From: Sphyrna mokarran
Lineage: Eukaryota
DNA length: 64,000 bases
Direction of reading: 5' to 3'
Assembly: GCA_024679065.1 (NCBI GenBank)
Contig: JAGIQG010000040.1
Coordinates: forward strand, 4,154,001-4,218,000
A program made the position numbers and the translations under genes. The first letter of the stretch is position 1, and each line of letters begins with the position of its first letter. Shown piece after piece: positions 41,601 through 62,605 of the stretch. Below the pieces are notes generated by a model. The model ran no database searches, had not been told where the DNA came from, and was given only the letters and a program-made list of their open reading frames with translations.

Positions 41601-42137
41601 AGGAACTTACGCACATTTGGGATTTTAAAATGATTCATTAGAGATAAATCCAACTCAGACATATGGAATATGTTTTGCTCTCTGTGTTCCCCCACATCTA
41701 TAAATCCCCGTCCCACAGCCTCTCCCTCCTTCATGGGCTGAAATCCAAACCAATCTCATCATTTCTTTCCTACACTCTGTTTTCTCCCTCCCTCTCTTCT
41801 GTCTAGGTTCAGTTCTCCAGACTCCTGTTTGCAGACTGACAACAAGATCAATAGATCTTAACTGGACTAGTTTTATATTCCAGATTTATTAATTGTGTTG
41901 AAATTCTGCCATTTTTGATTGTGGGATTTGAACCCATGACTCCACAGAATTAGTCTGGGCCTTTGGATTATTGTTCCAGTGGTATTATTACAACACCACT
42001 ATGTATATCTTTAGGTATGTGTATATGACATGTATATGAGACACAGATGTATGAGATATATCATATCTAAATAAACAAACTCAAATGATCAGAATGAGCA
42101 TGGTTTAGTCTGATTAACAGCAGCATTACCTCTGCAG

Positions 42138-42755
42138 TCACTTGTGAACTCGTCCATGTGTCAGCAGGTTGGATAACTGAATGAATCTCTTCCCACACTC
42201 AGAGCAACTGAATGGCCTCTCACCAGTGTGAATTCGCTGGTGTGTCATCAAGGCAGCTGACTGAGCAAATCTCTTCCCACACACAGAACAAGTGAATGGC
42301 CTTTCACCAGTGTGAACTCGCCGGTGTATCAGCAGTTGAGATGATTGAGTGAATCCATTTCCACACTGGGAGCAGGTGAACGGTCTCTCCCCAGTGTGAC
42401 CTCGGTGGTGGACGGTGAGGGCAAACAATTGCCTGAACTTCTTTCCACAGAACGTGCAACTGAATGGCTTCTCTTGTGTGTGAATTCGCTGGTGTGACTG
42501 GAGGGTGAATAACATAGTGAATCCCTTCCCACAGACAGAGCACAAGAATGGCCTCTCACCAGTGTGACTGCGTCGATGAGTTTCCAGCTCCGATGGGTAA
42601 TTGAATTCCTTCTCACATTCCCCACATTTCCATGGTTTCCCCATGCTGTGACTGCGTTTGTGTCTGGACAGGCCGGATGAATGGCTAAAGGCTCGTCCAC
42701 AAATAGAACACGAGTATAGTTTCTCGGTCGTGTGAATGGTGCTATTTGGCTCCAT
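42138..42755 (-). CDS. C2H2 zinc-finger protein, 7 fingers (start MEPNS)
   Basis: Finger repeats; first ATG at 42755. Confidence 0.88.
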
Positions 42756-43224
42756 GTTCAAATTCTGATGACAGTCAGGTGAGAATAGATCAAGCAATCT
42801 GTCGTATCATGAAATTAGATTTAAAATTTGACTGCAAATCTCTCCATCGAATCCTTGTGAAATGGAACAGAAAACAAGTGTGAAAGAACTGTAAATTCCT
42901 GTCAAACACTCTCCCCCCTCCCTGGGTTGAAATCCAAACCCATCTCGCCATTTCTTTCCTCCACTCCCAGTTTTCTCCCTTCTTCTCTTCTGTCTGGGTT
43001 CAGTTCTCCAGCTCCCGTCTGCAGACTGACAATAAAACCAATGGGTCTTATTAGGGGAATTGGGGCCTCCAGCGGGTGTTTGTGAATCCTCCCCGCCCAC
43101 CTCCCAGGGTTTCCTTCCTTCCTTCCCAGAGATCAGAGTCCTCATTGATTTGAGGCTAAAGCGTAAGCTCTTATTTGTTGTCCCCCTCCCCCATCCTCTG
43201 ATGTGAACCATCCTACAGTGGCTG

Positions 43225-43869
43225 AACCAGGATGGGGCCGTTAACCTGCGCCTGTTCCCGGGAGGGATGGAGAAGCCCCGCAGCTGCAAACCAGGGAGCT
43301 GACAATGATTCAAAGTGTTTCCAGACCTTCCGAACCACCGCCTAACGCTGACTCCGCTTCTCCGGGACAAACAAGCACCAAGGGACAGCAATGACATTGC
43401 GCATGATCCACATCACAATGCCCGGGGACTGGTTGACGGCAGCTCTGGACCAATAGGAAGAGGGGGCGGGGCTGGAGGTCTGATCGGGAGCGACTTGTCC
43501 TCCAACCAATCGGACTGAATGAGGGGCGGAGCAGGGGAGGGGGAATTGAGCTGCTGGTCGTCCAACCAATCGGAATGAATGAGGGGCGGAGCGGGAGGAT
43601 TGAGTGGCTGGTCCTCCAACCAATCGGAGTGAACGAGGGGCGGGGCTGGAGACCAACACTCAGAAGAAACCCGGTGAATGTGGAGCAAACGTTGCAGCAG
43701 CGGAGGGGGAGGCGCTGGAACCGGCGGCTGGATATTGGGGAGGGTCTGGAAACACTTTGTGGATCGGCAAACTCTTCAGAATCATTGTCAGCTCCCTGGT
43801 TTGTAGCTGCGGGGCTTCTTCTCCTTCCCTCCCCGGGAACAGGCCCAGGTTAACGGCCCCATCCTGGTT
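43225..43869. promoter_or_regulatory. Bidirectional CpG-island promoter cassette 1: inverted arms 43225-43331 / 43739-43869 around a CCAAT+GC-box core
   Basis: Lies between divergent ZNF genes; ccaaccaatcgg at 43502, 43562, 43616, each followed by GGGGCGG. Confidence 0.8.
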
Positions 43870-44099
43870 TGGGAGCTGAGCATGCGCAGTGCCTGGAGAC
43901 AAACGGTAAGGAGCTCGAGCGAGCGGGTTTTAAATGGAGATTTTTACAAAGACCGAACGCGAATCTAGAGCCCGAAATAAAACCGGAAACGTAGATGGAG
44001 TTGGCGGGTGGGTGGTGAGGCTTTATAAACACCCGGTGTCGGCTACAAACCCTCAATTTGTGAAAAAAGTTCCTCGGGCCTTCCAAAAGCTTCAGTCCC

Positions 44100-44200
44100 G
44101 AGTTCACATCCGCCATCTTTATCAGGGTCCACGCACTGCAAAGCGCATGCGCATCCGCCATCTTTATTGAGGGTAAATTGGAACAACGCATGCGCAGCCC
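44100..44200. promoter_or_regulatory. YY1/NRF1 motif cluster
   Basis: CCGCCATCTT at 44110 and 44155; GCGCATGCGC 44143; ACGCATGCGC ~44186. Confidence 0.55.
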
Positions 44201-44717
44201 CCGCAGTTCTAGGGGATGAAACCAAATGAATATCCCACAGGGGATTAAAAAAATCAGAGATGGAGTTTGTTATGAAATCAATGTGTTGTTGTAAAATTGG
44301 AATTTAGGGTTAAAGCCAACAACATAATACCATTAATACCATTGGGGAACAAGAGCAGAAAAGCTGTTCCTTAGAAATTAGACTTGTCAGGACTGACAAT
44401 AGTTTTGTAAACTCCTTTTACAGGATGTCTGAAGAGGAAGATTTACAGTCAGAAAAATGGAACCAAGAATTAACAGTCACTCGATTCACCAGCATCTGAA
44501 CACCATCAGCCTTTGAATTTCGAGTGTGGGAAAAGATTTCAAATATCAGTGTGACTGGAAAAGCACCAAGACACACACACACACACACACACACTCAAGA
44601 GAGAGCTTTCCAGTAAATTGACTCTGTAGCCAGATTCACAGCCTGAAAAAACATTACACCAATGAGAATCTACACATGTGTTGTGTATGTGGAGGAGACT
44701 TCAATTAATCATCCAAC

Positions 44718-45251
44718 ATGGAGAGACGTGATGATACTGATACCATAGAGAAACCGTGGATATGTGGGGACTGCGGGAAAGCATTCACTTGCCCATCTAA
44801 ACTGGAAACTCATCGACGGACCCACACTGGGGAGAGACCCTTCACCTGCCCCGTGTGTTGGAAGGAATTTACTCAATCATCCTGCCTAACATTACACCAG
44901 CGAGTTCACACTGGACAGAGACCATACACTTGCTCAGTTTGTGGGAAGGGATTTGTCCAGATGTATAACCTACAATTACACAGGAGAGTTCACACTGGGG
45001 AGAGGCCGTTCACCTGCTCCGTGTGTGGGAAGCGATTCATTAATTCGTCCAACCTTGTGACACACCAGCGAGTTCACACTGAGGAGAGGCCGTTCAGCTG
45101 CACTGACTGCGGGAAGAGCTTCAGACATTCATCCAGCCTCAAAGCACATCAGCGACTTCACACTGGGGAGAGACCATTCACCTGCTCAGAGTGTGGGAAG
45201 GGATTCACCACCTCCTCTCACCTGGTGACACACCAGCGACTTCATGAGTGA
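44718..45251 (+). CDS. C2H2 zinc-finger protein, 6 fingers
   Basis: Finger repeats; paralogue of 54318-55019 ([36 protein letters not shown]). Confidence 0.9.
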
Positions 45252-48027
45252 GTGCAGGGAGTGGGATTCTGCTGTAGCTGCTATTAATCACATCCAGGAG
45301 TGAGCCACATTCATTCTGGCATTTGAGATTTGTTTCTGTTGATGTTACTAATCCCTCTAGCTGGACGCAGGTTAATATTCTCGATCTAGAACTGATTGTG
45401 TTTTCGAGGATGCTACTTCCTTTTAAGAACCGCTGTCTGTGATCTTTCCCCATCATTCAGGAACTCTCATCACATCCTTTACAGTGGAGAAAGAGGCCAT
45501 TCAGCTCATCAAATCGGCACTGACTCACTGAAAGAGCCTAATCCCACTGCCCTGCCATAACCCCTGTGACCTTGCACATTCTTTCTTTCAGAAAACAATC
45601 CAATTCTGTTTTGAGTACCTTGGTCAAACCTGCCTCCACTTCCCTCACAGGAAGTTTATTCCAAACTCCAGCCGCCCATTTACCCCTCTACCACGGCTAC
45701 TTTCGCAGCCAGTTATTCCTGGAGAGGGAGCATGCAGTGTCCATGGGCACAGTTGACACTTTCCGTGCCCGTTGGGAACCACGGGCTAGGGTGCATTATT
45801 GACCCTAATAATCACATTTTAATTTGATGTTTTCAAGTTTCCTGTATACTTTGGTGTGTTCCTCCTCCTTTTGGGGAGCTGCCCTTTTTACTTTGTCCTG
45901 ATTTAACTTGAGTTTGTTTATTTGGTTTGACCTTAAAAGAAGCCAACCACCCACTCGGTGAAAATAGTTTTCCTCACTTTGAGTCTTTTTTCCCCATTAA
46001 TGCAGGTGTGTGCCCTCTGTTTCTTCGTATTCTCTTGGTGGGAATATTTTATCACTATTTCACTGCCCAATTCCTCAGGATCTTGAATTCCTCTATCAAT
46101 CTCCTCTCAACCATCTTCAATCAGGCAATTAATGTTTATTTCTTCTGATATTAATAATCTCTGTATCTGGACAGAATTTAATATCCTGACGTCTGTTAAA
46201 TAAATCAGCTTTGTTTCAAACACATAGTGTGTCAAATCCTTGATTTCTTCAAGATTAATTGATGTCCTTTTTTTTCTCCTTTCTAACTCTAGATTATTTC
46301 AGACTTTCAGTTACACATTTTTTAAAACTTTATTTATTATTGTCACATGTATTAGCATACAGTGAAAAGTATTGTTTCTTATTGACAAACCCCAGCTCCC
46401 TATACCTTTCAGAATATCCCTCCCAGTCTTGAGATCTAGGGAAGTTTTCAGTATTTAAAACAGAAAATACTGGAAATTATAATCCATACTTTTCCAAATG
46501 TCAGTTGGTTGTATCTCAGATATTAGTTTTTCCCTACCACCGATGTTAAGCTGATTGTTCTGTAATTGCTGTGTTTTTGAATAGGGATATAATATTTACA
46601 TTTTCTGTCCTTTGTCACCATGATTCTATAAGGAAGATTGTGGTCAGAGCCTCCACAAGCTCCATGTGAAAGATGCTATGTAACAGAGTACAGCAGTCCC
46701 TCAATGTCAGACTGGAGTGTCAGCCTAGATAATGTGCTCAGCTTGATGAGTATTTCCTGTTATTGATGTGGATCATTCACAAACAATGGACTCTGATGAT
46801 GTCATCCAGTCCTGCTGCGATGATGTCATAGAGACTATTACATCACAGCGGAGCCTTAATGGTGAAAACAGTTTTGTTCCAGATGGGAGGTGATGGTCAA
46901 TGGTATTATCTCTAGATTATTAAACCATAAACTCAGCTAATGTTCTGAGTTTTAAATCCCACCATAGCAAGTGATGTAATTTGAACAAAGAACAAGAAAA
47001 AAGAAAATTACAGCATAGGAACAGATCCTTTGGCCCTCCAAGCCTGCACCTACCATGCCTCCTGTTTGAACTAAAAAACCCGTCTGGGGACCAGATCCCT
47101 CTATTCCCATCTTATTCATGCATTTGTCCAGGCACCCCTTAAGTCACTATTGTATCTGCTTCCACTACCTCCTTAGCAGTGAGTTTCAGGCATCTACTAC
47201 CCTCCGCATAAAAAAAACTTGCCTCATGCATCTAATTCAATAAAAACAACTGAATTCAATGAAAAAAAAATCAGAATTAAGAATCTACTGCTGACCATGA
47301 AACCATTGTCAATTGTCAGAAAAAAATCATTTGGTTCAGTTAAGTAAAAAATAGCGTTTATTTATTAGTCACAAGTAGGCTTACATTAACAGTGCAGTGA
47401 GGATACTGTGAAATTGCCCTGGCCGCCACAATCCAGCATTTGTTTGAGTCAATGCATCTATCCAGCATGTCTTTCAGATTGTGGGAGGAAACTTGAGTAC
47501 TTGGAGAGGTACTCAAGAGAGTACCATGATCTCTATGCAGAGATCATGCAAACTCCACACAGGCAGTGACCCAAGCCGGCAATCGAACCCCTGGCGCCAT
47601 GAGGCAACGGTGCTAACCACTGTGACACCCCATGAATGTCCTTTTGGGGAAGGAAATCTGCTCTCCTTACCTATCAGGCCTACATGTGACTCCAGAGCCA
47701 TAGCAATGTGATTGACTGTCAACTCCCCTCTGAAATGGCCTAGTAAGCCACACAGTTCAATGGCAAATAGGGATGGGCAATAAATGCTGGCTGTGCAATG
47801 ACTCCCACGTTCCACAAATGCATAAAAAAATCCCCACTGTTTAAATTCACATAGTCATTCTGTCTCCTTTTGAAACTACCACTCAATTCACCAGTTTAAA
47901 AAAAAATCAGAATTTAACCACAGAAATTATTTTATTTTCTCAGATTTTCTTGACATATCAATAGAAATGGGCATCAATGAACATAATTCATTCCTGGATG
48001 TGATTTATAGTAAAATCCAGTCACTGA

Positions 48028-48291
48028 TTATTTGCGAACTTGCTGATGACTCATCAGGCTGGATGAGCTAGTGAATCTTTTCCCACACACGAAGCAGATG
48101 AATGGTCCCACCCCAGTTTGAATTCGCTGGTGTCTCTGCAAGATGGGTGACCGAGTAAATCCTTTCTCACACTGCAAACAAATGAATGGATTCTCCCCAG
48201 TGTGAATCAGCTGGTGTGCATGCAGTTGACATAATTGTCTAAACCCAGTCCTGCAGTGAGAGCAGCTGAATGGTCTCTCATTGGGATGCAA
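48028..48291 (-). pseudogene. Orphan three-finger fragment just 3' of the 14-finger gene, no ATG
   Basis: CSHC/CLQC/CFVC fingers, two with a lost terminal His; different frame from the upstream gene. Confidence 0.7.
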
Positions 48292-48329
48292 TTAACAGTA
48301 GCAATAACAGCAGAATCACATTCCTGTGA

Positions 48330-49535
48330 TCACTGGTGAATTCGCTGGTGTCTCACCAAGTTGTGTAACTGGGTGAATCTCTTTCCACACATTGAACAAG
48401 TGAACGGCTTCTCCCCACTGTGAACTTGTTGGTGCCTCAGCAGAATGGATGACCGGGTGAATCCTTTCCCACACTCAGTGCAGGTGAACGGTCTCTCCCC
48501 AGAGTGATTTCGCTGGTGTGCGAGCAGAAGTTTTCTGCTTTTAAACCTCTTCTCACAGTCAGAACATTTGAATGGTCTTTCATTTGTGTGAACAAGTTGG
48601 TGTGAAGTGAGAGAGGATAAACAAGTGAATCCCTTCCTGCACACAGGGCAGGTGAACGGCCTCTCCCCAGTGTGAATTCGCTGGTGTACAGTGAGGTCCC
48701 CTGATCGCCTGAAGCCAGTCCCACAGTGAGAACACGTGAATGGCCTCTCATCAGAGTGAACACGCCGATGGTGACGCAGTTCCTCTGAACTTTTATAGCC
48801 CTTGCCGCAGTTTGGGCATTTAAACAGTCTCTCTTCAGTGTGAACACGTTGGTGTTTCTGCAGGTTGGATGATCGGTTAAATCCCTTCCCACATTCAGAG
48901 CAGGTGAACGGCCTCTCTCCAGTGTGAATGCGCTCATGTGCCACAAGGTGAAACGATGTCCTGAACCCCTTCTGGCAGTGGGAGCAGCTGAACGGTGTGG
49001 AACCAGTGTGAATGTACTGATGCTCCCGCAGTGTGCGTGGAGTTTTAAAACTCTTTCCACACTCAGAGCATTTAAATTCTCGCTTGTCGGTGTGAACACG
49101 CTGGTGTCTCTGCAGGGCAGAGAAATCTGTGAATCCCTTCCCACACATGGAGCAGGCGAATGGCCTCTCCCCTGTGTGAACATGCCGATGTATCAGCAGG
49201 GCTGATGACTGAGTAAATCCTTTTCCACATTCAGAGCAGGTGAACTGCTTCTCCCTGCTGTGAATGCGCTGGTGTATCAACAGACCAGCTGACTGTGTGA
49301 AACCCTTCCCACACACAGGGCAGCTAAAAGGTCTCTCTCCAGTGTGAATGCGTCGGTGACTTTCCAGGTCAACTGGGTAATTGAATCCCTTCCCACAGTC
49401 TCCACATTTGTACGGTCTCTCCCTGATGTGACTGCGCTTGTGTCTTGACAGGCCAGATGATCGTTTGAAGCCTTTTCCACACACAGAACATGTGTACAGT
49501 TCCGCCCCACTGTAAACGGTGCTTTTTTCTTCCAT
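48330..49535 (-). CDS. C2H2 zinc-finger protein, 14 fingers (likely start MEEKS; ORF 5' of ~49642 is probably intron)
   Basis: Finger repeats; acceptor tcatttttcag on minus at ~49642. Confidence 0.9.
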   Translation of the reverse strand: MEEKSTVYSGAELYTCSVCGKGFKRSSGLSRHKRSHIRERPYKCGDCGKGFNYPVDLESHRRIHTGERPFSCPVCGKGFTQSAGLLIHQRIHSREKQFTCSECGKGFTQSSALLIHRHVHTGERPFACSMCGKGFTDFSALQRHQRVHTDKREFKCSECGKSFKTPRTLREHQYIHTGSTPFSCSHCQKGFRTSFHLVAHERIHTGERPFTCSECGKGFNRSSNLQKHQRVHTEERLFKCPNCGKGYKSSEELRHHRRVHSDERPFTCSHCGTGFRRSGDLTVHQRIHTGERPFTCPVCRKGFTCLSSLTSHQLVHTNERPFKCSDCEKRFKSRKLLLAHQRNHSGERPFTCTECGKGFTRSSILLRHQQVHSGEKPFTCSMCGKRFTQLHNLVRHQRIHQ

Positions 49536-50939
49536 GTTCAAAGGCCGATGATATTTAGATCCTGACGAATCGAGGCACTCTATAAGATTTTGATGTGATC
49601 CTTGATTCACAATCGTCTGTAATTCCTCACCTTCTAATCCCCTGAAAAATGATGTGAAAACAGAAAGAAGGAACCATGAGAGACAAGCTATAAACACACA
49701 GAGGCAAGATGTGAAATTAAGTTGTATGAATCTGATAAATTATGGGATTGGGAATGAGAAAAGGGTTATGAAAACTGCTGGATTGTCATAAAGCTTCAAA
49801 CTGTTCACCAGTGCACTGAGGGAAAGGAACCCTTCATCTCTTCAGAGCCCACAATAAGAATCCAGCCTTTATGCGTGAAGAGGGAGAGGTCAGAGAGAAA
49901 GGTAACGGAAAGAGATTTTATACATCAGCAACTCAACCAGGATTTTGGCAGAATCTCCCAAACGCACGGTCTTTCCCACCTGGAAGTACCACAGCAGCTG
50001 GGACATGGGAAAATCACGCAACTCCTTGACTTGGACAAATATCACTGTCCCTTCAATGTGACTGGGTTAAAATCCTAATACAGTTGCATTGTGGAAGCGC
50101 CTTTACTACATGGACTGCAGGGGTTTAAGAAAAAGGCCAACTATCACAATCACAAAGGACAACTGGTGATTGGTAACATATCACTGTCAGTGCAGAATAG
50201 TAGTTCAGCTTAGTAATCTGGGCCTTGTGAGTAACATCCTCATCCTAAGAAGTTTTATTTTTTGCAAATCTATATGAAACCTGCAATAAGAGAAAACCCA
50301 TGACCACTACAATCTAAAAGGACAAAGACAGTGGACAGGTGGGAAAACCACCATTTGGAAGTCCTCCTCCAAGCCACTCACTACCCTGATTTGGAAATGT
50401 GTTGCCATTCTTTCAATGTCATTGAATCAAAATCCTGGAATTCCCTCCCTAGCAGCATTGTGGGTGTACCAACCACATGGACTGCAGCGATACAAGAAGG
50501 CAGTTCACAAACACCTTTTCAAGGACAATCAGGGATGGGAAGTAAGTGCTGGTCTAATCCAATGACACCCATCTCCATTGAATGATTTTGAGAAATGACC
50601 TGGAATGTCAGTGAGAACACAATTCTGATCATTACTAAGTGAAATACTTCACTCAGTCACATCACTTTCTGAGTTTACTTTTGACTGGAGCTCTTGAATT
50701 CCGCTGTTAATTGCTGCTGCTTTTGGAACACATTTGGGCATTTTGCAATTCTCCACTCTATTCCCATTCCCCTTCTTTCTGATGGGTAATGAAGGATCTG
50801 TGCACATAGATTTCCGTATAACTTGGTTCCTCCTTTAATTAATTTATAGAACCCGCCCCCGTTCCCCAATCTACACACAACCGTGAAAACATAACGAGCT
50901 CCTAATAATGACTTTCAATGGCAGAGTCCTGACCCAGCA

Positions 50940-51330
50940 TTCCCCGCGGTGCTGAATGTCTCCTATTCACACCAGCGGCCGGCACTGCACAGGCGCACTA
51001 ATCCCCTATTGGAGCATGCGCACTGTCAGTAATGGCGATAGTAATGGCTCTGTTTTTGCCTCTTTGCAGCTGGGAAGGGAGAGAAAATTCTGAGGGAGCG
51101 GGCTCTGGATAAGGAGAGTTTCTAAATACCTGGCGAGTGCCCCAAACCGCGATTGAGACTCTCCCGTGTTTGCAGCTCCGGATCTTTTCCTCTCCGAGGC
51201 CCAAGACCAGACTGACGGCTACCATCTTTGTTCAACGAGAAGCGCATGCGCGGGGTACTCGACGCAACAATACGGAGGGGCGGGGCTAAGATTATTCTCT
51301 TCCCACCGGGTCCTAGTGTCCGGTACAGTC
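50940..51330. promoter_or_regulatory. CpG-rich promoter paralogous to 33990-34335
   Basis: gcatgcgcactgtcag; ccatctttgttca; GCGCATGCGC 51242; ggggcggggcta, in the same order as at 34 kb. Confidence 0.65.
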
Positions 51331-51739
51331 ACCAGTTAATTCGATTTTTCAACATTTCCTCCCAGTTTCAGGCTGCAGCTGATGTTTTGCAAGGTTGATA
51401 ATCTACCTCAACTCCACCTCCCCATATTGCTCAGTTTCTCTTTGTACCCAAATATTTATCAATCTTTATCTTAATTACATTCAATGGTCGAGCATCCACT
51501 GCACCCTGAGAAAGAAAATTCCAGACATTCACAACTGAATGAAGAACTTTCTCCTCATTTTAATCTAAACAGTTGACTCCTTATTCGGAAATTGTGACCC
51601 CTTATTCCAGATTCTCCAGTCAATGGAAATATTTTCACACCATCTAACCTCTCAGGCCCACGAAAAACCATGTAGTCTAATTAGATCACAGCTCATTTTT
51701 CTCACCACCATTAATTTGATTCTAGTCTAATTTCATAGA

Positions 51740-51970
51740 TAAAAGCAAAGTACTGCAGATGCTGGAATCAGAAACAAAAATAGAAAATGCTGGAAAATCT
51801 CAGCAGATCTGACAGCATCTGTGGGGAAAGAATAGAACCAACATGTCGAGTCTGGATGGCTGTCCATCAAAACTCAGAAAGGGTCATCCAGATTTGAAAT
51901 GTTGGCTCTATTCTCTCTCCACAGATGCTATCAGACCTGCTGAGATTTTCCAGCATTTTCTGTTTTTTTT
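51740..51970. mobile_element. Fold-back element with ~85-bp imperfect inverted arms (possibly Penelope-like termini)
   Basis: agaaaatgctggaaaatctcagcag.tctga.agcatctgtgg vs ccacagatgctatcagacctgctgagattttccagcattttct; class assignment uncertain. Confidence 0.65.
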
Positions 51971-53789
51971 ATTTTACAAGTACCATGTTACCAAGTCCCT
52001 AACAATAAGATTTCTAATATTTCACCTACAACTGATGTTAACTGTTCTAGATCCCCCATTTTCTCTCCTTCTACTTTCTGGACTAGTGAGGTTAATGTTT
52101 GTTAACTTATGATCCTTGGGAAGTGTTCTAGAGTTTAAGGAATTCTGGAAGATCAAACTAAAGCAGCAATTATTTCTGAAGCTCCCTCTTCTAAATCCCC
52201 AAGATGGAAGTTGTCTGGTCCAAGGAATTTGTCACCATTTAGTCCCATTAATTTCTGCAGTCTCTATTTCTAGAAGACCCTCATTCTTATTCCACAAGCG
52301 AGTGTGAAACCTGTGTTTCCAAAGCCACCACAGCTTTAGACTTGTGCAGCTCCCACCATTAATCAATCAAACCCATTTTGATGGGAATTAAATGGCTTGT
52401 TTCAGTTTTTAAAACTTTTATTCACATTGCACTTGTCAGAAAGGATCATTCAATTCACAACTTTTCTGTAAAATTCCATAAAATGATGTCAGAATTTGTC
52501 TATCTGTTTTTTTCATTATTACTGAGATTTGATGAACTGCATTACAACTCGAACAATATTGGATTGGTGACAAATGTTTAAAAATGGCTCTTTCTTGTAT
52601 TAAAGTTCCAGTCCCCTTGCACTAACCCTTTGGTTCCTCATTATTAGAATTTTTCTTTTGTCTTCTACCATGAAGACAGATAGATAGGGTATTTGTTGCA
52701 TTTCTCTGCCATTTCCTTATTCCCCATTATATTTTCCCTTTTATCTGCCTCTCATAGAGAATGTTTACTTTCACTCACTTCTCCCTATTCACATGCCTAG
52801 TGAAACATTTAAAACTCTACTTTGTAAACTCTTACTGGTCTATCCCTAAAAAGGGAATTGAGCTCAGAAGTGATTTTACAACAGTTTATTGAGAAGGAAC
52901 ATTTAAAACAAGATGCATCAGTTAAACAGACAGGAAAAGTACCTGACCTGTGAGAGAGGTTTACAAATCCCAGAGGACAAGCAGATGACTGAAGCCAAGT
53001 GAATGTTGATGTCCATAGCTGATATCTATGGAAAGTTCACTTCAATGACCCTGATTGTCGATGTTGGGGAGAAACCAGTTAATTTGAAACCTCTTTGCTC
53101 TTGAGGGCCTATTTTAACCTTTACATGTAGTTAGCTACCATAAGAACTAATGGTATCGGGGTTAAAAATGTCTTGCTTCACGGCTTGTGTTAGACACAGG
53201 TCCTTGGCAGGGAGAAAGCTTGCCATGTTTGTTAGCTGGGACAAGCTTTCTTCCGAAGTCAGAGGAAGGGCTTTTTCTATAATATTCCATCAGTATGCAA
53301 AAATTTTATAAGGCTATTAGATGGTGATTTTTTTCCAATCTGTTACTTGGATTCAACTTATCGCCATTCCTGTGCTGGCACTGCAGGGGCTGAGTGCATT
53401 ATTGACCTTAATAATCATATTTTAATTTAATGTTTTTAAGTTTCCTTTGTACTTTGATTTTGTTTGGGCTGTTCCCCTCCTTTTGGGGAACTGTCCCTTT
53501 CACTTTGTCTGATTTAACTTGAGTTTGTTTATTTAGTTTGACCTTAAAAGAGGCCATTCCTGTGCTGAGAAAATTTCTGTTCCAAATTTAATGGGTGACA
53601 TTTGGAGACTCTTGATTCTCCACCAATTTCCCATTCCCCTTCTTTCTGATGGATAATGGCAGCGTCACTGTGTGTAATGTGCAAGTGAGTAAGAATTCTC
53701 AGTAAGGATTAATCAGCACTTTCTAATTGGAGATGTTCATCAGTGCAACCTCTCAGATACTGAGTAGCAGAATTCGGGCCAAGATCAGT

Positions 53790-54092
53790 AGGGGGACACG
53801 GTAACACAGTGGTTCGCACTGCTGCCTCACAGTGCCAGGACTCAGGTTCCATTCCCAACTTGGGTCACTATTTGTGTGGAATCTGCATGTTCTCCCCATG
53901 TCTGCATGGGTTTTCTCCAGGTGCTCTGGTTTCCTCACACAGTCTGAAAGACGGGCTGGTTAGGTGCATTGGCCATAGTAAATTCTCCCTGTGTACCCAA
54001 ACAGGCGACTGGGGTATTTTTTTTTTTACAGTAACTTCATTGCAGTGTTAATGTAAGTCTACTTGTGACACTAATAAAGAAACTTAACTTAA
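53790..54092 (+). mobile_element. tRNA-derived SINE
   Basis: cacggtaacacagtggttcgcactgctgcctcacagtgccagga head and family tail. Confidence 0.75.
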
Positions 54093-54317
54093 ACAATTTG
54101 AGATTGAAGTAAAAGTTATAAATCTTGTTGTAAACTCATTTCTGATGGACAGCAGTAACTGCAACCCCAGAAGCACAATCACCTCTTGATCCAGAATATT
54201 AACCTCCAGCCGAGTTATTGGCTGTATTAACATCAGCAGAACAAACTCCTGCTGTCAGAATGAAAGGACCTGGTTGCCATTAACAGCAGCAATAACAGCA
54301 GAATCCAATCCCTGCCG

Positions 54318-55019
54318 TCACTTGTGAACTCGCTGGTGTTTCAGCAGCTGAGATGAATCAATGAATCCCTTCCCACACTCGGAGCAGGAGAACGGCCTCT
54401 CCCCAGTGTGAACCCGTTCATGTCTCAGCAGTTGGCATGAATCAGTGAATCCCTTCCCACACATGGAGCAGGTGAATGGCTTCTCCCCGGTGTGAGCTCG
54501 CTGGTGTACCGTGAGACTGCCCGAGTGTCTGAAATTCTTTCCACAGTCAGTGCAGCTGAATGGTTTCTCCCCGGAGTGAACTCGCTGGTGTTTCAGCAGA
54601 GTGGACGAAAGTTTAAAGCTCATTCCACAGTCAGTGCAGCTGAATGGTTTCTCCCCGGAGTGAACTCGCTGGTGTGCCACTAGGTTCGAGGAATTAATGA
54701 ATCCCTTCCCACACACAGAGCAGGTGAACGGCCTCTCCCCGCTGTGAACCCGCCGGTGTAATGCTAGATTGTATGACTGAATGAACCTTTTCCCACACAC
54801 AGAGCAGCTAAACGGCCTTTCCCCAGTGTGAACACGCTGGTGTAACGCTAGGTTGGATGACTGAGTGAAATCCTTCCCACATATGGAGCAGGTGAAGGGT
54901 CTCTCCCCAGTGTGGGTGCGTCGATGAGTTTCCAGTTTGGATGGGCAAGTGAATGCTTTCCCACAGTCTCCGCATATCCACGGTTTCTCTGTAGTATCAG
55001 TGTCTTCATGTCTCTCCAT
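54318..55019 (-). CDS. C2H2 zinc-finger protein, 8 fingers
   Basis: Finger repeats; internal finger duplication [13 protein letters not shown] x2. Confidence 0.9.
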
Positions 55020-55479
55020 GTTGATGATCAGATGAAGCCTCGTCTAAACATACAACACGTGTACATTTCCCCTCACTGAATGGTGATGTTGTTTCAGGCT
55101 GTGTAACTGTTTAAAGCTCTTTCCACAGTTCACTAGAACACTCTCACTCGGGTGTGCATGTGTCTCAGTGCTTTTTCAGTCACACTGATGTTTGAAATCT
55201 TTTCCCACAGAGAAAACAAACAAACATTTCTCCTTCCACATTCCAAGTATGATGATATCCAGGTCCTCGGAATTGAGTGATTCTGTCAGATCTTGATGTG
55301 ATGTTTAGTTTCAGATTCCCCCATCTGCAATCCTCAACTTTAATACCTGTAAAAACCATCAAAAAAAGTCATTACTGACAGTCCGTGATAGAAATTCTAA
55401 ACAGACAATTCTAGTTTCTTCGCAATTTTTTTCCTCTCAAACCCCCAGAGTTGCAGATTCCCATCCCACACACTCTCCC

Positions 55480-56240
55480 TTAAAGTTTATTAATTAGTCA
55501 CAAGTAAGGCTTACATTAACATTGCAATGAAATTCCCTTCATTGCCAGCACCTGTTTGGATCAATGCACCAAACTAGCACATCTTTCCAACTGTAGGAGG
55601 AAACCGGAGCATCCAGAGAAAACCCATGCAGACACAGAGAGAACATGCAACTCCACACAGTGACCCGAGCTGGGAATCAAACCCAGGACCCTGGCACTGT
55701 GAGGAAGCAGTGCTACCCACTGTACTACCATGCCACCCCTACTAAGTGTACTGAGATGATTTATGACATTTTAAATAGAAATTATTATTGGCTTTAACTC
55801 TGACCTCCTGTTTTATAAACAACCTATGATTTCGCAACAAACATTAGCTCTGATGTTTTGTTTGTTGATGGCTAATCCATTTGGTTTTGCCTTTTGTAAA
55901 GATGGCCAATCTTAATGTCTAAGAATGTAGCCTCGCAAATTGAGGGATTAAAATCACAAGTAAGCTTATATTAACACTGTAATAGAGATACTATGATAAT
56001 CCCCTCTTGCGACATATCAGTGCCTATTCAGTTACACTGAGGGAGAATTTAGCCTGGCCAATCCACCTAACTAGCACGTCTTTCAGACTGTGGGAGGAAA
56101 CCGGAGCACAAGGAGGAAACCCACGCAGACACGGGGAGAATGTACAGCCTCCACACAGACAGTATCCCGGGCTGGGAATTGAACCCAGCTCTCTGGCGCT
56201 GTGAGACAGCAGTGCTAACCCACTGTACCACCCTGCCCCG
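55480..56240 (-). mobile_element. Two SINE copies (~55480-55740, ~55950-56240)
   Basis: Reverse-strand SINE motifs gggaggaaaccggagca...gctgtgagacagcagtgctaac. Confidence 0.7.
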
Positions 56241-56395
56241 AGATCCAGCATCTGGCCGACACCAGAAGCCTCACCCCCCGGATCCATTTATGTTTCCGGT
56301 TTGATTTCGGGCTGTGGATCCGCATCATTTAAAATTCCCATTTAAAACCCGCTGGTTCCAGCTCCTCACCGCCTGCGGATCCACAATGTTTCCAA

Positions 56396-57160
56396 ATCCT
56401 CCAGTGGCTGAGCCAGGATGTTGTGCCGTTAATCTGGGCCTGTTCCCGGGAGGGAAGGAGAAGCCCCGCAGCTGCAAACCAGGGAACTGACAATGATTTT
56501 GAAGGGTTTGCGGATCCACAAAGTGTTTCCAGACCCTCCGAGCCACCGCCTAACGCTGACTCCGCTTCTCCGGGACAAACAAGCGCCAATGACAGCAATG
56601 ACACTGCGCATGATCCGCATCACAATGCCCGGGGACTGATTGACGGCGAGTCCTGACCAATAGGAAGAGAAGGCGGGGCTGGCGGACCGAGCGGGAGCAG
56701 CTGGTCTTCCAACCAATCGGAGTGAATGAGGGGCGGGACTGGAGGACCGAGCTGGCGCGAGTAGTCCTCCAACCAATCGGAGTGAATGAGGGACGGGGCT
56801 GAAGGATCGAGCGGGTGCGGCTAATCCTCCAACCAATCGGAGTGAATGAAGGGCGGAGCTGGAGGTCTCACCAGGAGCGGCTGGTCCTCCAACCAATCGG
56901 AGTAAAGGAGGGCGGGGCTGGAGACCAACACTCAGAAGAAACCAGGTGAATGTGGAGCAAACGTTGCAGCAGCGGAGGGGGAGGCGCTGGAACCGGCGGC
57001 TGGATATTGGGGAGGGTCTGGAAACACTTTGTGGATCGGCAAACCCTTCAGAATCATTGTCAGCTCCCTGGTTTGTAGCTGCGGGGCTTCTCCCTCCCTC
57101 CCTCCCTCCCGGGAATAGGCCCAGGTTGACGGCCCCATCCTGGCTCAGCCACTGGAGGAT
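56396..57160. promoter_or_regulatory. Bidirectional promoter cassette 2: inverted arms 56396-56539 / 57011-57160; four 60-bp CCAAT+GC-box units
   Basis: ccaaccaatcggagt at 56709, 56769, 56829, 56889; between divergent ZNF genes. Confidence 0.82.
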
Positions 57161-58485
57161 GGTTCACATCAGAGGATGGGGGAGGGGGACAGTAAATAAG
57201 AGATTACACTTTGGCCTCAAATTAATGAGGACTCTGATCTCTGGGAAGGAAGGAAACCCTGGGAGGTGAGCAAGGAGGATTCACAAACACCCGCTGGAGG
57301 CCCCAGCATCCCCAATAAGACCCATTGGTTTTATTGTCAGTCTGCAGACAGGAGCTGGAGAACTGAACCCAGACAGAGGAGAGGGAGGGAGAAAACTGGG
57401 AGTGGAGGAAAGAGAATTGTCTGTTCATTGTTTCTATTGTGAGCTGATTTTTAAAATTGTTTTTACACACAGTTACAATTTGACGATTAACACACAGAAA
57501 ATTTAACCCCAAGAGAAATATTTGTCTCTTTGTAATTTATATTCTGCATTGGTTGTAATTTTTTTTCGTAAACAGAGATTACAGCTTTCCGGAAAGATTA
57601 AATGGATTGAAGTTTTTTTTCCCTATAGAGCAGTGATCTGATAGAAGTCTTTAAAATTATCAGTGCCTTGGAGAAATGTGGAGAGAATGCTTCCACTTGT
57701 GACAGAGTCTAAAAGGAGCAACAATCAGTAAACAAACAGTCATAAATACTAGATAGTTACTACCAAATCCAGGCAGGCAATAAGGATAAATTTCTTCACT
57801 CTCGGGTTTAGAATTACCAGAGAAATGAGTTGAGGAAATTGCTGAGATTGTTTGTTTCAAAAGGAAATGGGAGAAGCGCACAAGAGAAAAAGAAATAGAA
57901 AAATCAACTGAAAGACTGAGATGAGATACATGGGGCAGGAGAAGATGTGTCAAGTATAAAGAATTAAACTGATTTGTTTGAGTCTTGTATATTCAAAGTA
58001 ATTCAATATAAACTCCTTTTCCAGAATATCTGCAGACGGGCGATTCAAACCAAACCTCTCAGGATCTGACAGTGTCACACAATTCTTCAGGATCTGAATA
58101 TCAAAGGCCGATGAATGTGGAAGGAGAAATGTTTGCCTGTTTTATCTTTGGGAAATTATTCAACATCATTGTGACTGGAAAAGCCCCGAGACTCAGACAT
58201 CTCCATTATTTTTCCCCAGCTGGAACAGATCTTTAACCAGTCAGAGTGAAAAGAAATAACGCATTTACATCAGGTAGACACCGTACTCGTGTTCTTTGTG
58301 TGGACCTGGTTTTTAACTGATTGGATAACCTGGAGAGACATGAGGACACTTGCATCGTGTGAACAAGGAGCAGCAACAGGCCATTCAGCCCCACAGGCCA
58401 GTTCCACCATTTAATAACATCATGGCTGATCTGATAGTCAGCTTGAATCTGCATTCCGCCTACGCCCGATAGCCTGTCAATAATC

Positions 58486-59634
58486 ATGGAGAAACCGTGG
58501 AAATGTGCGGACTGTGGGATGGGATTCAATTACCCATCTGAATTGGAAACCCATCGACGTATTCACACTGGGGAGAGACCATTCACCTGCTGTGTGTGTG
58601 GGAAGGGATTCACTCAGTCATCCAGCCTGTACACACACCAGCATGTCCACACTGGGGAGAGGCCGTTCACCTGTCTTCAATGTGGGAAGGGATTTAATGC
58701 CTTGTCAAACCTCCGGACTCACCACCAGGTTCACTCTGATCAGAGACCGTTTAAATGTTCCGATTGTGAGAAGAGCTTTAAAAGCAGAAAGGATTTATTG
58801 ATTCACCAACGCACTCACACTGGGGAGAGGCCGTTCATCTGCAACACGTGTGGGAAGGGATTCACTCAGTCGTCCCACCTCCTGACACACCAAAGTGTTC
58901 ACACTGATCAGAGACCATTTAAATGTTCTGACTGTGAGAAGAACTTTAAAAGCAGAAAGGATTTACTGATTCATCAACGCACTCACACTGGGGAGAGGCC
59001 GTTCATCTGCCCCGTGTGTGGGAAGGGATTCACTTGTTCATCGCAGCTCCTGAAACACCGATTTGTTCACACTGATCAGAGACCTATCAATTGTTCTGAA
59101 TGTGAGAAAACGTTTAAAAGCAGAAAGGATCTTCTGAAACACCAGCACACTCACACTGGGGAGAGGCCGTTCACCTGCTCTCTCTGTGGGAAGGGATTCA
59201 CTCGATTAGCCCACCTTCTGAGACACCATCGAGTTCACACTGGGGAGAGGCCGTTCACCTGCCCTGTGTGTTGTCAGGAATTCACTGATACATCCGACCT
59301 TCTGATACACCGGCGAGTTCACACTGGAGAGAGACCTTACAGTTGCCTCCTGTGCGACAAGAGGTTCACTCAGTCATCCCACCTGACTACACACCAACTT
59401 GTTCACACTGATCAGAGACCTTTTGAGTGTTCTGATTGTGAGAAGAGATTTAAAAGTAAACAGAACCTGCTGAAACACCAGCAAGTTCACACTGGGGAAA
59501 GGCCGTTCAACTGTTCCATGTGTGGGAAGGGATTCGCTCAGTCAAACAACCTGCTGAAACACCAGCAAGTTCACAGGCGACAGCAGGGGTTGGATTCTGC
59601 TGTTATTGCTGCTGATTATCACGTCGAGGACTGA
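58486..59634 (+). CDS. C2H2 zinc-finger protein, 13 fingers plus C-terminal tail RRQQGLDSAVIAADYHVED
   Basis: Finger repeats; internal two-finger duplications (SDQRPFKCSDCEK.FKSRKDLL). Confidence 0.9.
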   Translation: MEKPWKCADCGMGFNYPSELETHRRIHTGERPFTCCVCGKGFTQSSSLYTHQHVHTGERPFTCLQCGKGFNALSNLRTHHQVHSDQRPFKCSDCEKSFKSRKDLLIHQRTHTGERPFICNTCGKGFTQSSHLLTHQSVHTDQRPFKCSDCEKNFKSRKDLLIHQRTHTGERPFICPVCGKGFTCSSQLLKHRFVHTDQRPINCSECEKTFKSRKDLLKHQHTHTGERPFTCSLCGKGFTRLAHLLRHHRVHTGERPFTCPVCCQEFTDTSDLLIHRRVHTGERPYSCLLCDKRFTQSSHLTTHQLVHTDQRPFECSDCEKRFKSKQNLLKHQQVHTGERPFNCSMCGKGFAQSNNLLKHQQVHRRQQGLDSAVIAADYHVED

Positions 59635-62189: not shown

Positions 62190-62450
62190 GCAGCACTGCT
62201 GCCTCACAGCGCCAAGGACCCAGATTCAATTCGCAGCCTGGGTCACTGTCTGTGTGGAGTTTGTACATTCTCCCCATGTCTGTGTGGGTTTCCTTCGGGT
62301 GCTCCAGTTCCCTCCTAGTCTAAAAGACGTGCTGATAAGGTGCATTGATCCAAACAGGTGCCGGACTGTGGCGTCTAAGGAAATTTTACAGTCACTTCAT
62401 TGCAGTGTTAATGTAAGCCTACTTGTGACTAATAAATAAACTTTACTTTG
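62190..62450 (+). mobile_element. tRNA-derived SINE
   Basis: gcactgctgcctcacagcgccaaggacccagattcaattc; family tail. Confidence 0.75.
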
Positions 62451-62484
62451 ATGAAGAGTTTCAGCAGGTGAGGGAGATCTGGGC

Positions 62485-62605
62485 TCAGCCTCGCTCCTCA
62501 TTCACTCCGATTGGTTGGAGGACCAGCCTCTCCCGCTCTGTCCTCCAGCCCCACCCCAGCCGTCAATCAGTCCTGGACATTGTGATGTGGAGCATGTGCA
62601 GTGCC
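62485..62605 (-). promoter_or_regulatory. Third, partial copy of the CCAAT promoter core
   Basis: cctcattcactccgattggttggaggaccagc and gccgtcaatcagtcc...cattgtgatgtgga are reverse complements of the core. Confidence 0.65.

What the first reader, a model, noticed from the sequence alone, without database searches (positions are those of the whole stretch)
42950..57412. Flipped promoter cassette: an inverted-repeat-bounded bidirectional core sits in opposite orientations between paralogous ZNF pairs
Seen: two head-to-head ZNF pairs are inverted paralogues. 44718(+) matches 54318(-), and the [18 protein letters not shown] genes 42755(-) and 58486(+) correspond. Flank A (42950-43224) is the reverse complement of 57161-57412, and flank B (43903-44000) is the reverse complement of 56282-56372. 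Yet the cores (43332-43738 and 56540-57010) are in the same + orientation, so the core is reversed relative to its genes. Each core is bounded by ~110-150-bp inverted arms. A diagnostic base (gcagctGcaaa in both left arms, gcagctAcaaa in both right arms) travels with the core, which places the exchange in the outer arm. By eye the cores are also more alike than flank B. Inference: recombination or gene conversion via the arms has flipped an asymmetric (all CCAAT on one strand) promoter. That could switch which ZNF is favoured, as a fixed historical event or a recurrent flip-flop.
Basis: partly seen in the sequence, partly recalled or inferred. Interest (0 to 1): 0.8.

Follow-up and report, generated by a model that had tools for sequence, protein, structure and literature searches.

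The report
Flipped promoter core between paralogous ZNF pairs
Two inverted copies of a head-to-head zinc-finger gene pair share a promoter cassette whose central part is reversed relative to its genes, most likely a single old inversion between the cassette's own inverted arms and not an active switch.

Summary
blastn shows flank A and flank B inverted between the two loci. The 406-470-bp CCAAT/GC-box core, with its 123-150-bp inverted arms, aligns only in direct orientation.

New points:
- The block of flank A plus arms plus core is multi-copy: about 4-10 copies at 85% likeness or more in raw reads of the same species. It is also present in another species.
- This block is 94-99% alike between the two loci. 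Flank B is 83% alike and the ZNF exons 79-84%.
- In a probable RNA run the arms and flank A are covered and the core is not, so the arms look like palindromic first exons.
- The arms now share perfect blocks of only 24-27 nt. They are poor substrates for frequent recombination.
- No TSD, transposase or RNA family was found.

Best reading: a small palindrome nested in each arm of a larger inverted duplication, whose spacer was inverted once and later patched by gene conversion. A recurrent flip-flop and any effect on expression remain untested. I could not fetch the other family copies, and read laying allows a single call. Interest is moderate.

The parts
42138..42797 (-). A1: C2H2 poly-zinc-finger ORF, ATG at 42755 (L1, A side)
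   Evidence: ORF list. Pfam zf-C2H2 with 7 stretches and no effector domain. Own-locus contigs of run X2 at 42000-42390 and 42669-42907 have 1 other letter each.
42950..43209 (-). Flank A of L1: probable 5'UTR and first-intron region of the A gene. It belongs to the multi-copy block.
   Evidence: Inverted match to 57161-57417, 240 of 254 identical. Raw-read depth is 19-31 against about 3.6 for single-copy bins.
43210..43332 (.). L1 left arm. It carries a private 20-bp deletion after 43310.
   Evidence: Four-arm alignment. Against the reverse complement of the L1 right arm: 101 matches, 4 mismatches, 24 gap nt.
43333..43738 (+). L1 core: core-left (43333-43440), a CCAAT + GC-box array of 54-60-bp units (43440-43643), and core-right (43642-43738).
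   Evidence: Direct match to 56541-57010 only. CCAAT at 43450, 43506, 43566 and 43620; GGGGCGG four times. Run X2 depth is 1.35-6.
43739..43867 (.). L1 right arm
43868..44045 (+). Flank B of L1: 38 nt with a GCATGCGCAGTGCC motif, a GT donor-like site at 43906, then intron-like DNA. Single copy.
   Evidence: Inverted match to about 56240-56395, 91 of 110 identical over 43870-43999. Raw-read depth 3.7. Run X2 depth is 0 at 43989-44339.
44718..45251 (+). B1: C2H2 ZNF ORF (L1, B side)
   Evidence: Run X2 contigs at 44745-44977 and 45293-45467 have 0 other letters.
54318..55019 (-). B2: C2H2 ZNF ORF (L2, B side), paralogue of B1
   Evidence: 44714-45207 vs 54530-55023 is 82% inverted. Pfam.
56240..56395 (-). 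Flank B' of L2. A SINE-like copy (56018-56237) cuts it short on the outside. The stretch 56373-56402 repeats the arm's inner end.
56396..56540 (.). L2 left arm. Its outer 16-17 nt match the arm-proximal end of flank A.
56541..57010 (+). L2 core: same + orientation as the L1 core, with four array units
57011..57160 (.). L2 right arm
   Evidence: 133 matches and 9 mismatches against the reverse complement of the left arm. About 145-bp stem in the DNA fold.
57161..57417 (+). Flank A' of L2
   Evidence: Homology ends sharply at 57417 (L2) and 42950 (L1).
58486..59634 (+). A2: C2H2 ZNF ORF (L2, A side). It lacks the first finger of A1 and sits 1.07 kb from flank A'.
43638..43819 (+). Near-identical direct tract (partner 56910-57091) spanning core-right and the inner right arm. 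Candidate recent gene-conversion tract.
   Evidence: 99%. The 2 differences in 182 nt are at 43672 and 43773. Fisher p = 0.018 against flank A and 0.006 against the rest of the unit.
62480..62680 (-). C3: armless relative of the core with one CCAAT unit and core-left, followed on the + strand by a GCATGTGCAGTGCC motif and a GT donor-like site
41698..41860 (-). Partial direct copy of distal flank A, upstream of a third A-type ZNF remnant
   Evidence: 82.4% to 42889-43050 and 86.4% inverted to 57417-57316.

Best explanation
The thing is a nested palindrome. Each locus is a head-to-head pair of effector-less C2H2 zinc-finger genes.

What the cassette looks like:
- A non-transcribed, CpG-rich core lies between the two genes. 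It holds an array of 54-60-bp units, each with a CCAAT box and a GC box. These are NF-Y-type and Sp1-type sites; the factor names are recalled, not tested.
- The core is bounded by 123-150-bp inverted arms. The arms appear to be the transcribed first (5'UTR) exons of the two genes.
- The two loci are themselves arms of a larger inverted duplication (about 40.3-45.3 kb and 54.3-59.9 kb).

What happened (inferred):
- In one lineage of the family the core was inverted by an exchange between its own arms. The exchange could have been an intrachromatid crossover, a gene conversion or a template switch.
- The arms, with the start sites, stayed in place. The array is almost equidistant from both arms, so the flip was probably near-neutral and became fixed.
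- Gene conversion keeps flank A plus the cassette far more alike than the genes. It has since acted at least once in the new, direct register.

Shown versus inferred:
- Shown: the anatomy, the orientation, the identity levels and the copy number.
- Inferred: that the arms are transcribed, the order of events, near-neutrality, and which locus flipped (not resolved).
For: Orientation:
- Flanks are inverted and the core direct, and no inverted match covers the core.

Arms:
- They are significant inverted repeats.
- The sites that separate left-type from right-type arms (G/A at alignment column 107 and the indel pattern at columns 73-88) travel with the core. No arm site travels with the flanks.

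Identity strata:
- Flank A 240/254, left arm 115/123, core-left 101/107, right arm 124/129, core-right 96/97.
- Flank B 91/110; ZNF exons 79-84.5%.
- Flank A differs from flank B, p = 0.0006.
- A 182-nt tract has 2 differences.
- A similar tract exists in the inverted register: 221 nt at 97% (40873-41093 vs 59226-59446) inside an 84.5% alignment.

Family:
- Raw reads of the same species give depth 14-37 over 42936-43871, against 2.3-5.1 in seven single-copy bins.
- Depth drops back to 3.7 at 43872-43988.
- A second species also holds the block.

Transcription pattern in run X2, which is probably RNA:
- Depth 36-82 on flank A and the left arm, 16.7 on the right arm, 1.35-6 on the core, and 0 at 43989-44339.

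Symmetry:
- The array lies about 118 nt from the left arm and about 96 nt from the right arm.

Precedents, from passages I read:
- Spacer or arm inversions by intrachromatid exchange in palindromes are rare compared with conversion (PMC3723533).
- NF-Y acts in either orientation (PMC1802594).
Against: - No independent read or contig was shown to span flank, arm and core at either locus. The listed contig pieces break at the repeat borders. The assembly's orientation therefore rests on the window alone.
- The B-side junction of L2 is not what a clean crossover inside the arm predicts.
- The arm evidence for the exchange point is one SNP plus one indel pattern in a GGGA-rich microsatellite-like stretch.
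- X2 is only guessed to be RNA. Depths over the cassette are family-wide sums, not locus-specific.
- The 2/182 tract was picked after looking, and purifying selection on a promoter element could also produce it.
- One event is the minimum needed. With 4-10 family copies unseen, more events cannot be excluded.
Confidence: 0.6

Rival explanations
1. The core was not inverted in place. It was copied in parallel register: gene conversion or a double crossover templated by another cassette (L1, L2 or a third family member). The inverted arms let two oppositely placed cassettes pair head to head, so the recipient gets a core reversed relative to its own flanks.
For: Conversion clearly acts here in both registers: 182 nt with 2 differences in the direct register, and 221 nt at 97% in the inverted register. 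The block of flank A plus cassette is homogenised relative to genes and flank B. L2 carries the family-majority letter at 10 of the 12 cassette-block sites (42981-43773; 43590 left out) listed where L1 differs; 43053 and 43058 are unclear. I read this. The 17 nt of flank-A-type sequence on L2's B side would fit a tract that ran past the arm.
Against: Core-left (94.4%) and the arms (93.5-96%) are no more alike than flank A (94.5%). A recent L1-L2 copying of the whole core is therefore excluded. An older one cannot be told apart from an in-place inversion. No donor locus is in hand.
Confidence: 0.2
2. Recurrent flip-flop: the cassette toggles repeatedly, in evolution, between individuals or in somatic cells. 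This would re-weight expression of the two divergent ZNF genes.
For: The architecture allows it. The family has several copies in at least two species. One arm site (alignment column 37) is locus-specific, A in both L1 arms and G in both L2 arms, which hints at arm-to-arm exchange within a locus. A same-strand CCAAT array can bias the direction of a bidirectional promoter, 3.5-fold in Mrps12/Sarsm (PMC1802594, passages read).
Against: The longest perfect arm-to-arm blocks are 24 and 27 nt. That is well below what efficient homologous exchange is recalled to need in vertebrates. No raw-read joint for a flip was listed: X23 shows 0 reads at the 43333/43738 joint. Only about 3 in 100 of that run was read, giving depth about 3.6, so this is weak. 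The contig joint in X1 and X3 is explained by L1's private 20-bp arm deletion. The array is nearly symmetric between the arms.
Confidence: 0.1
3. The arms plus core form a TIR-bounded mobile element that inserted independently, in either orientation, into the two loci.
For: Long terminal inverted repeats and several copies in the genome.
Against: There are no matching target-site duplications at either locus. The 8 nt outside the arms differ (read). The multi-copy, high-identity block also includes flank A, which lies outside the inverted repeat, and ends at 42950. Both loci share flank A and flank B, so the cassette predates their duplication. The cassette ORFs have no Pfam domain (0 families for 2 of 2 ORFs). 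The armless relative C3 shows that the core is a ZNF promoter type.
Confidence: 0.03
4. Assembly artefact: the core orientation at one locus was mis-set when near-identical inverted arms were resolved.
For: No listed independent contig bridges flank, arm and core. The region is rich in paralogous repeats.
Against: The cassette is only 660-770 bp, and the arms differ at several sites and by a 20-bp indel. The window has no gaps. The two cores differ by 33 substitutions and by unit number (3 vs 4 array units), so neither is a copy-paste of the other. That a single long read would span the cassette is my inference; the sequencing technology is unknown to me.
Confidence: 0.05

Closest known systems
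Spacer or arm inversion in genomic palindromes by intrachromatid exchange between inverted arms (for example human Y palindrome P6; PMC3723533, passages read)
   Same: A unique spacer lies between inverted arms. The arms exchange sequence. Inversion is a rarer outcome of the same intermediates that give conversion. The event leaves the outside flanks untouched.
   Different: The scale differs greatly: arms of 123-150 bp and a spacer of 406-470 bp here, against about 110-kb arms and a 46-kb spacer. Arm identity is 94-96% here, against more than 99.9%. The spacer here is a promoter and the arms are probable first exons. The comparison here is between paralogous loci, not between alleles.
NF-Y-driven bidirectional promoters with same-strand CCAAT arrays (mouse Mrps12/Sarsm; PMC1802594, passages read)
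   Same: Head-to-head genes, an array of CCAAT boxes mostly on one strand, and GC-rich sequence without an obvious TATA box. In that paper the array sets both the level and the directional bias (3.5-fold).
   Different: Here the boxes sit in tandem 54-60-bp units between long inverted arms, and the intergenic distance between ATGs is about 2 kb. No binding or reporter data exist, and the factor names are recalled.
Bacterial invertible promoters (invertons such as fimS or hin; recalled)
   Same: A promoter-bearing segment bounded by inverted repeats is found in both orientations relative to the flanking genes.
   Different: No recombinase gene is nearby. The arms are long and diverged, not short recombinase sites. 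No evidence shows both states at one locus. The promoter is bidirectional, so a flip does not switch a gene off.
Concerted evolution of 5' regions in tandem ZNF clusters and inverted segmental duplications (general knowledge; no paper read for it here)
   Same: The promoter and first-exon block is much more alike than the coding arrays. There are short near-identical tracts inside diverged alignments.
   Different: Conversion here works in two registers, direct and inverted, because the block is itself palindromic.

Membership tests
Inverted-repeat (palindrome) spacer inversion | Unique spacer bounded by two inverted arms | tested here: met
   L1 arms E 5e-31. L2 arms 88% over 152 columns. DNA fold z = -18.8. 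The core has no inverted self-match.
Inverted-repeat (palindrome) spacer inversion | Spacer reversed relative to homologous outside flanks | tested here: met
   Flanks A and B are inverted and the core direct between L1 and L2.
Inverted-repeat (palindrome) spacer inversion | Breakpoints inside the arms (chimeric arms) | tested here: inconclusive
   One SNP and one indel pattern travel with the core, and none travel with the flanks. The B side of L2 has 17 extra nt of flank-A type and a 30-nt inner-end copy outside the arm.
Inverted-repeat (palindrome) spacer inversion | Both orientations at one locus, or several independent events | tested here: inconclusive
   The only arm joint (43333/43738, contigs of X1 and X3, 0 raw reads of X23) is ambiguous, and raw depth was only about 3.6. 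The other family copies could not be fetched.
Bidirectional CCAAT/GC-box promoter | Divergent genes sharing one short intergenic region | tested here: met
   A1 ATG is at 42755 (-) and B1 ATG at 44718 (+). B2 is at 55019 (-) and A2 at 58486 (+).
Bidirectional CCAAT/GC-box promoter | CCAAT and GC boxes in the shared region | tested here: met
   The 25-nt unit pattern matches 8 times against 0 expected. Motif map.
Bidirectional CCAAT/GC-box promoter | Transcripts start on both sides and run outward | tested here: inconclusive
   Run X2 depth is high on the arms and flank A, near zero on the core, and 0 in the B-side intron. X2 is only guessed to be RNA, contigs cannot show starts, and cassette depth is family-wide.
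Bidirectional CCAAT/GC-box promoter | NF-Y/Sp1 binding and reporter activity in both directions | not testable with these tools
   Needs ChIP, EMSA or dual-reporter assays.
TIR DNA transposon / MITE | Target-site duplication flanking the terminal repeats | tested here: not met
   The 8 nt outside the arms differ at both loci (read).
TIR DNA transposon / MITE | The mobile unit is delimited by the repeats | tested here: not met
   The multi-copy, high-identity block runs from 42950 to about 43870. It includes 260 bp of flank A outside the repeat.
Recombinase-driven invertible promoter (inverton) | Site-specific recombinase gene nearby | tested here: not met
   The four gene-pair ORFs are C2H2 ZNFs and two of the cassette ORFs have no Pfam family (6 proteins; ORF list); the other ORFs in 40-60 kb were not scanned.
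Recombinase-driven invertible promoter (inverton) | Both orientations present in one population of molecules | tested here: inconclusive
   as above.

The most novel reading that the evidence does not exclude
The cassette is a eukaryotic counterpart of an inverton. Across the shark ZNF cluster, and possibly between individuals, the palindromic first-exon arms repeatedly flip the asymmetric CCAAT array. Each flip would shift the expression balance between the two divergent ZNF genes, giving a fast, reversible way to retune a rapidly evolving transcription-factor family.
Probability: 0.08. Interest if true: 0.85.

Novelty: new variant of a known kind. Interest (0 to 1): 0.4.

Why it matters
If the flip is a fixed, single event, it still provides a rare natural experiment. 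The same bidirectional promoter sits in both orientations between paralogous gene pairs in one genome. Comparing A:B transcript ratios at the two loci would test directly whether a same-strand CCAAT array sets promoter direction in vivo.

It also shows that inverted-repeat-mediated spacer inversion and two-register gene conversion operate at sub-kilobase scale inside vertebrate gene clusters. Standard synteny or structural-variant pipelines would miss such events.

If the flip recurs across the family, it would be a new kind of regulatory variation in vertebrates. A library search for 'invertible promoter' plus 'vertebrate' returned 5 papers, none of which, by title and abstract start, describes one in a vertebrate genome (listing only).

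Tried and rejected
1. Fetching paralogous loci through the ZNF protein. There were 3271 proteins with E <= 1e-20 among 8000 scored candidates. The best identity among the 120 listed was 63%, with no near-identical paralogue, so the route was too unspecific and I dropped it.

2. Using spurious ORFs across the cassette as handles for other copies. This gave 1 hit among 4 candidates: P0121, 98 aa, 77% identity. It starts inside the arm and says nothing on core orientation.

4. The search for related loci with the alignment of the two cassette ORFs and P0121:
- Viral contigs: 39 pattern matches, 0 confirmed.
- Metagenome contigs: 379 pattern matches, 0 confirmed.
- A 25-nt CCAAT-unit pattern in metagenome contigs: 0 matches.
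None of these collections is expected to hold shark DNA, so the blanks mean little.

5. Earlier-findings look-ups by place, sequence and words. Only title lines of related notes came back, with no sequence.

6. Polarising the flip with the armless relative C3. C3 matches the core through core-left. Beyond that it has only weak matches to flank A (18 nt; E 0.025 against L1, 0.18 against L2) and to flank B (27 nt, E 0.001; 35 nt, E 0.067). Which locus is derived stays open.

7. My early idea that the GCATGCGCA-type motif marks the start site is rejected. Run X2 depth is low there and high in the arm.

8. The Fisher tests used 1 difference in 182. The tract has 2.

9. The last comparison (core vs the reverse complement of the core) crashed, because the alignment had no overlapping columns. 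I rely for the absence of an inverted match.

10. Rfam gave 0 matches over 40000-64000.

11. The third protein search, the representative search, the atlas and structure prediction were not used. The cassette is non-coding, and one search showed that the protein collections hardly hold it.

12. Supplements of papers were not consulted.

Full report
OBSERVATION

I call the two loci L1 (42950-44045) and L2 (56240-57417). blastn of 42000-45500 against 54000-59800 gives two kinds of match.
- Inverted: 42950-43320 vs 57417-57041 (89.5%, E 6e-135), and 43739-43999 vs 56539-56283 (79.6%, E 5e-46).
- Direct: 43210-43651 vs 56396-56864, and 43457-43867 vs 56724-57143 (E 6e-105 and 5e-136).
- No inverted match covers the core.

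The repeat finder had already shown the same picture (direct families D9, D10, D13, D14; inverted pairs I18, I24). The flank swap around a same-strand core is therefore real, and the window has no N.

The anatomy I use:
- L1: flank A 42950-43209, left arm 43210-43332, core 43333-43738, right arm 43739-43867, flank B 43868 to about 44045.
- L2: flank B' about 56240-56395, left arm 56396-56540, core 56541-57010, right arm 57011-57160, flank A' 57161-57417.

The arms are significant inverted repeats:
- L1: E 5e-31.
- L2: 88% over 152 columns.
- The L2 cassette folds as DNA into a stem of about 145 bp at -238.5 kcal/mol, against -141.2 +/- 5.2 for 20 shuffles.

The four flanking ORFs are plain C2H2 poly-zinc-finger proteins without an effector domain. 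B1 and B2 are 82% alike over 494 nt, and A1 and A2 81.6% over 158 nt, both in inverted orientation.

One correction: the CCAAT boxes are not all on one strand. It is 4 of 5 in L1 and 6 of 7 in L2. Each core has one reversed box next to the right arm.

WHAT THE CORE AND ARMS ARE

The core holds tandem units of 54-60 bp, each with a CCAAT box and a GC box. There are three units in L1 and four in L2, plus a leading CCAAT and GC box in each. A 25-nt unit pattern matches 8 times in the window against 0 expected: 7 on the + strand inside the two cores, and 1 on the - strand at 62495-62519.

That last match belongs to an armless relative, C3 (62480-62680). It has one unit and the core-left sequence. 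On the + strand these are followed by a GCATGTGCAGTGCC motif and a GT donor-like site. The core is therefore a promoter type of this ZNF family with an intrinsic polarity, not a foreign element.

Laying four runs on 42000-45500 at 85% likeness gave the main new facts.

First, copy number in raw reads of the same species (X23):
- Summed depth is 14-37 in the eight bins from 42936 to 43871.
- It is 2.3-5.1 in seven single-copy bins (42000-42116, 42702-42935, 43872-44105, 44223-44339, 44574-44690).
- Flank A plus arms plus core therefore exists in roughly 4-10 copies. Flank B is single-copy (3.7).
- Contigs of the same species (X1) show 317-1372 against about 50-66. Contigs of a second species (X3) show 368-2776 against about 55-64. 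Both agree.

Second, at 12 listed sites in this block (42981-43773, 43590 left out) nearly all family depth carries a letter other than L1's. I compared these with L2 by reading. L2 has the majority letter at 10 of the 12 (42981, 43016, 43157, 43162, 43177, 43215, 43226, 43249, 43479, 43773). The sites 43053 and 43058 are unclear. L1 is thus the more private copy.

Third, run X2 has 98 Mb of contigs and is labelled only 'RNA?'. Its coverage:
- It covers the ZNF exons of this very locus: contigs at 42000-42390 and 42669-42907 with 1 other letter each, and at 44745-44977 and 45293-45467 with 0.
- Depth is 0 at 43989-44339 and 1.35-6 over the core.
- Depth is 36-82 over flank A and the left arm, and 16.7 over the right arm.

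If X2 is RNA, the core is untranscribed promoter and the arms are the first exons of the two divergent genes. This matches an earlier unchecked note from the same chromosome piece (s1-887855, title line only).

IDENTITY STRATA

- Flank A: 240/254 (94.5%).
- Left arms, direct register: 115/123.
- Core-left: 101/107.
- Right arms, direct register: 124/129.
- Core-right: 96/97.
- Flank B: 91/110 (82.7%); it differs from flank A, p = 0.0006.
- ZNF exons and downstream DNA: 79-84.5%.

The high-identity block coincides with the multi-copy block and ends sharply at 42950/57417. I read this as concerted evolution of a promoter and first-exon unit inside an older inverted duplication.

Within the block, 43638-43819 vs 56910-57091 has 2 differences in 182 nt. 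This gives p = 0.018 against flank A and 0.006 against the rest of the unit. itself used a wrong count of 1. The tract was chosen after looking.

A tract of the same kind exists in the inverted register: 221 nt at 97% inside an 84.5% alignment. Conversion therefore seems to act in both registers.

Core-left and the arms are no more alike than flank A. The flip is thus at least as old as the roughly 5% divergence of the block, and the near-identical tract is later.

MECHANISM

The minimum history has four steps:
1. An old inverted duplication of the head-to-head pair.
2. Homogenisation of flank A plus the cassette.
3. Inversion of the core through its arms.
4. A later short conversion in the direct register.

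Arm sites:
- Those that separate left-type from right-type arms travel with the core. They are the G/A site and the indel pattern at alignment columns 73-88.
- None travels with the flanks.
- One site is locus-specific (column 37).
This fits an exchange in the outer arm, but it is thin evidence.

On the B side of L2 the picture is not clean:
- The inverted repeat runs 16-17 nt further out than in L1, with the letters of arm-proximal flank A.
- It is then followed by a copy of the arm's inner end: 27 of 31 columns match, and 0 of 1000 shuffles reach the score.
- L1 has an unrelated 38 nt at the same place.
Either the event was more complex, for example template switching at a CCTCC microhomology, or L1's B side was rewritten later. 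I could not polarise this. C3 matches both flanks only weakly.

Present-day arms share perfect blocks of only 24 nt (L1) and 27 nt (L2). From recalled knowledge of homology requirements in vertebrates, that makes frequent homologous flipping unlikely now.

The flip leaves the arms in place. The array lies about 118 nt from one arm and about 96 nt from the other. A passage in PMC1802594 notes that NF-Y acts in either orientation. Together these make the event plausibly near-neutral. The same paper, however, shows that a same-strand array of four CCAAT boxes biases a bidirectional promoter 3.5-fold. A directional effect therefore cannot be dismissed.

At L1, own-locus X2 contigs have depth 4.3-8.5 for A1 and 20-27.9 for B1. 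The matching numbers for L2 could not be obtained.

RIVALS

- Transposon. There are no target-site duplications. The repeated block includes flank A outside the inverted repeat. Both loci share both flanks. The cassette ORFs have no Pfam family. Rejected for these loci.
- Assembly artefact. No listed independent contig bridges flank, arm and core, so this is not formally excluded. However, the two cores differ by 33 substitutions and by one array unit, and the arms are distinguishable.
- Recurrent flip-flop. The only strand-changing joint at the arms (43333/43738) appears in 1 contig of X1 at depth 35.6, 1 contig of X3 at depth 564, and 0 raw reads of X23. Any copy whose core-left abuts an arm lacking L1's private 20-bp deletion would produce that joint. 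It therefore does not report orientation relative to the flanks. Raw coverage was only about 3.6.
- Parallel-register copying from another cassette. This is a variant of the best explanation and cannot be separated from it here.

COMPARISON WITH WHAT IS KNOWN

It works like spacer inversion in genomic palindromes, where inversions are the rarer outcome beside frequent arm-to-arm conversion. In the human Y palindrome P6 there were 3 inversions against 56 conversions (PMC3723533, passages read). The difference is scale, about a thousand times smaller here, with a promoter as spacer and first exons as arms.

It resembles bacterial invertons only in outline. No recombinase gene turned up among the six ORFs scanned, and no evidence shows two states at one locus.

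A search for 'invertible promoter' with 'vertebrate' found 5 papers, none of which, by title and abstract start, describes one in a vertebrate genome (listing only). Searches combining bidirectional promoter, inverted repeats, inversion and zinc finger genes, and shark with zinc finger expansion, listed nothing that describes this structure. I saw listings only, and supplements were closed.

VERDICT

This is a real, neat and probably fixed micro-inversion of a bidirectional promoter core inside a homogenised, multi-copy palindromic cassette. It is a new variant of a known kind of rearrangement, of moderate interest. Its value is as a natural test of promoter directionality, and it leads to a family-wide orientation tally that I could not run.

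Noticed in passing
window 33980-34930: A CpG-rich promoter-like stretch with GCATGCGCAGTG and GCCATCTT motifs is followed by about ten tandem copies of a unit of about 61 bp. It lies upstream of another ZNF ORF (36604-37536 +).
   Followed up: no
window 19000-21000: Extreme GC skew (-0.41 to -0.87) at about 50% GC, and AT skew +0.35 at 21001-22000. This is a strongly strand-asymmetric stretch.
   Followed up: no
window 40873-41093 and 59226-59446: 221 nt at 97% in inverted orientation inside an 84.5% alignment (40353-41209 vs 59949-59109). It looks like a conversion tract between a third A-type ZNF remnant and the 3' part of A2.
   Followed up: partly
window 45780-45945 and 53384-53556: Direct repeats of 85-96% lie in the 3' flanks of B1 and B2, although those genes are inverted relative to each other. 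This is either a shared mobile element or a second local orientation discordance.
   Followed up: no
window 47356-47500, 53806-54011, 55562-55734, 56018-56237, 62192-62347: Five copies of a SINE-like element, about 80-83% alike. The copy at 56018-56237 cuts L2 flank B short. The naming is from recall only.
   Followed up: no
window 57418-58485: A2 is separated from flank A' by 1.07 kb, against about 0.2 kb in L1. It has only a decayed remnant of the N-terminal exon and first finger near 58100-58200. Its ORF restarts at MEKPW.
   Followed up: partly
window 56373-56412: Outside the L2 left arm lie a 30-nt copy of the arm's inner end and then 16-17 nt of flank-A type. This may be a footprint of a template switch at a CCTCC microhomology.
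   Followed up: partly
window 51772-51970: A self-complementary stretch of about 200 nt (81%) lies in the spacer between the two loci.
   Followed up: no
window 44106-44222 and 44457-44573: Raw-read depth rises to 14 and 22 inside the B1 intron region, so there are further repeated pieces. The first holds a tandem GCGCATGCGC + GCCATCTTTAT motif pair.
   Followed up: no
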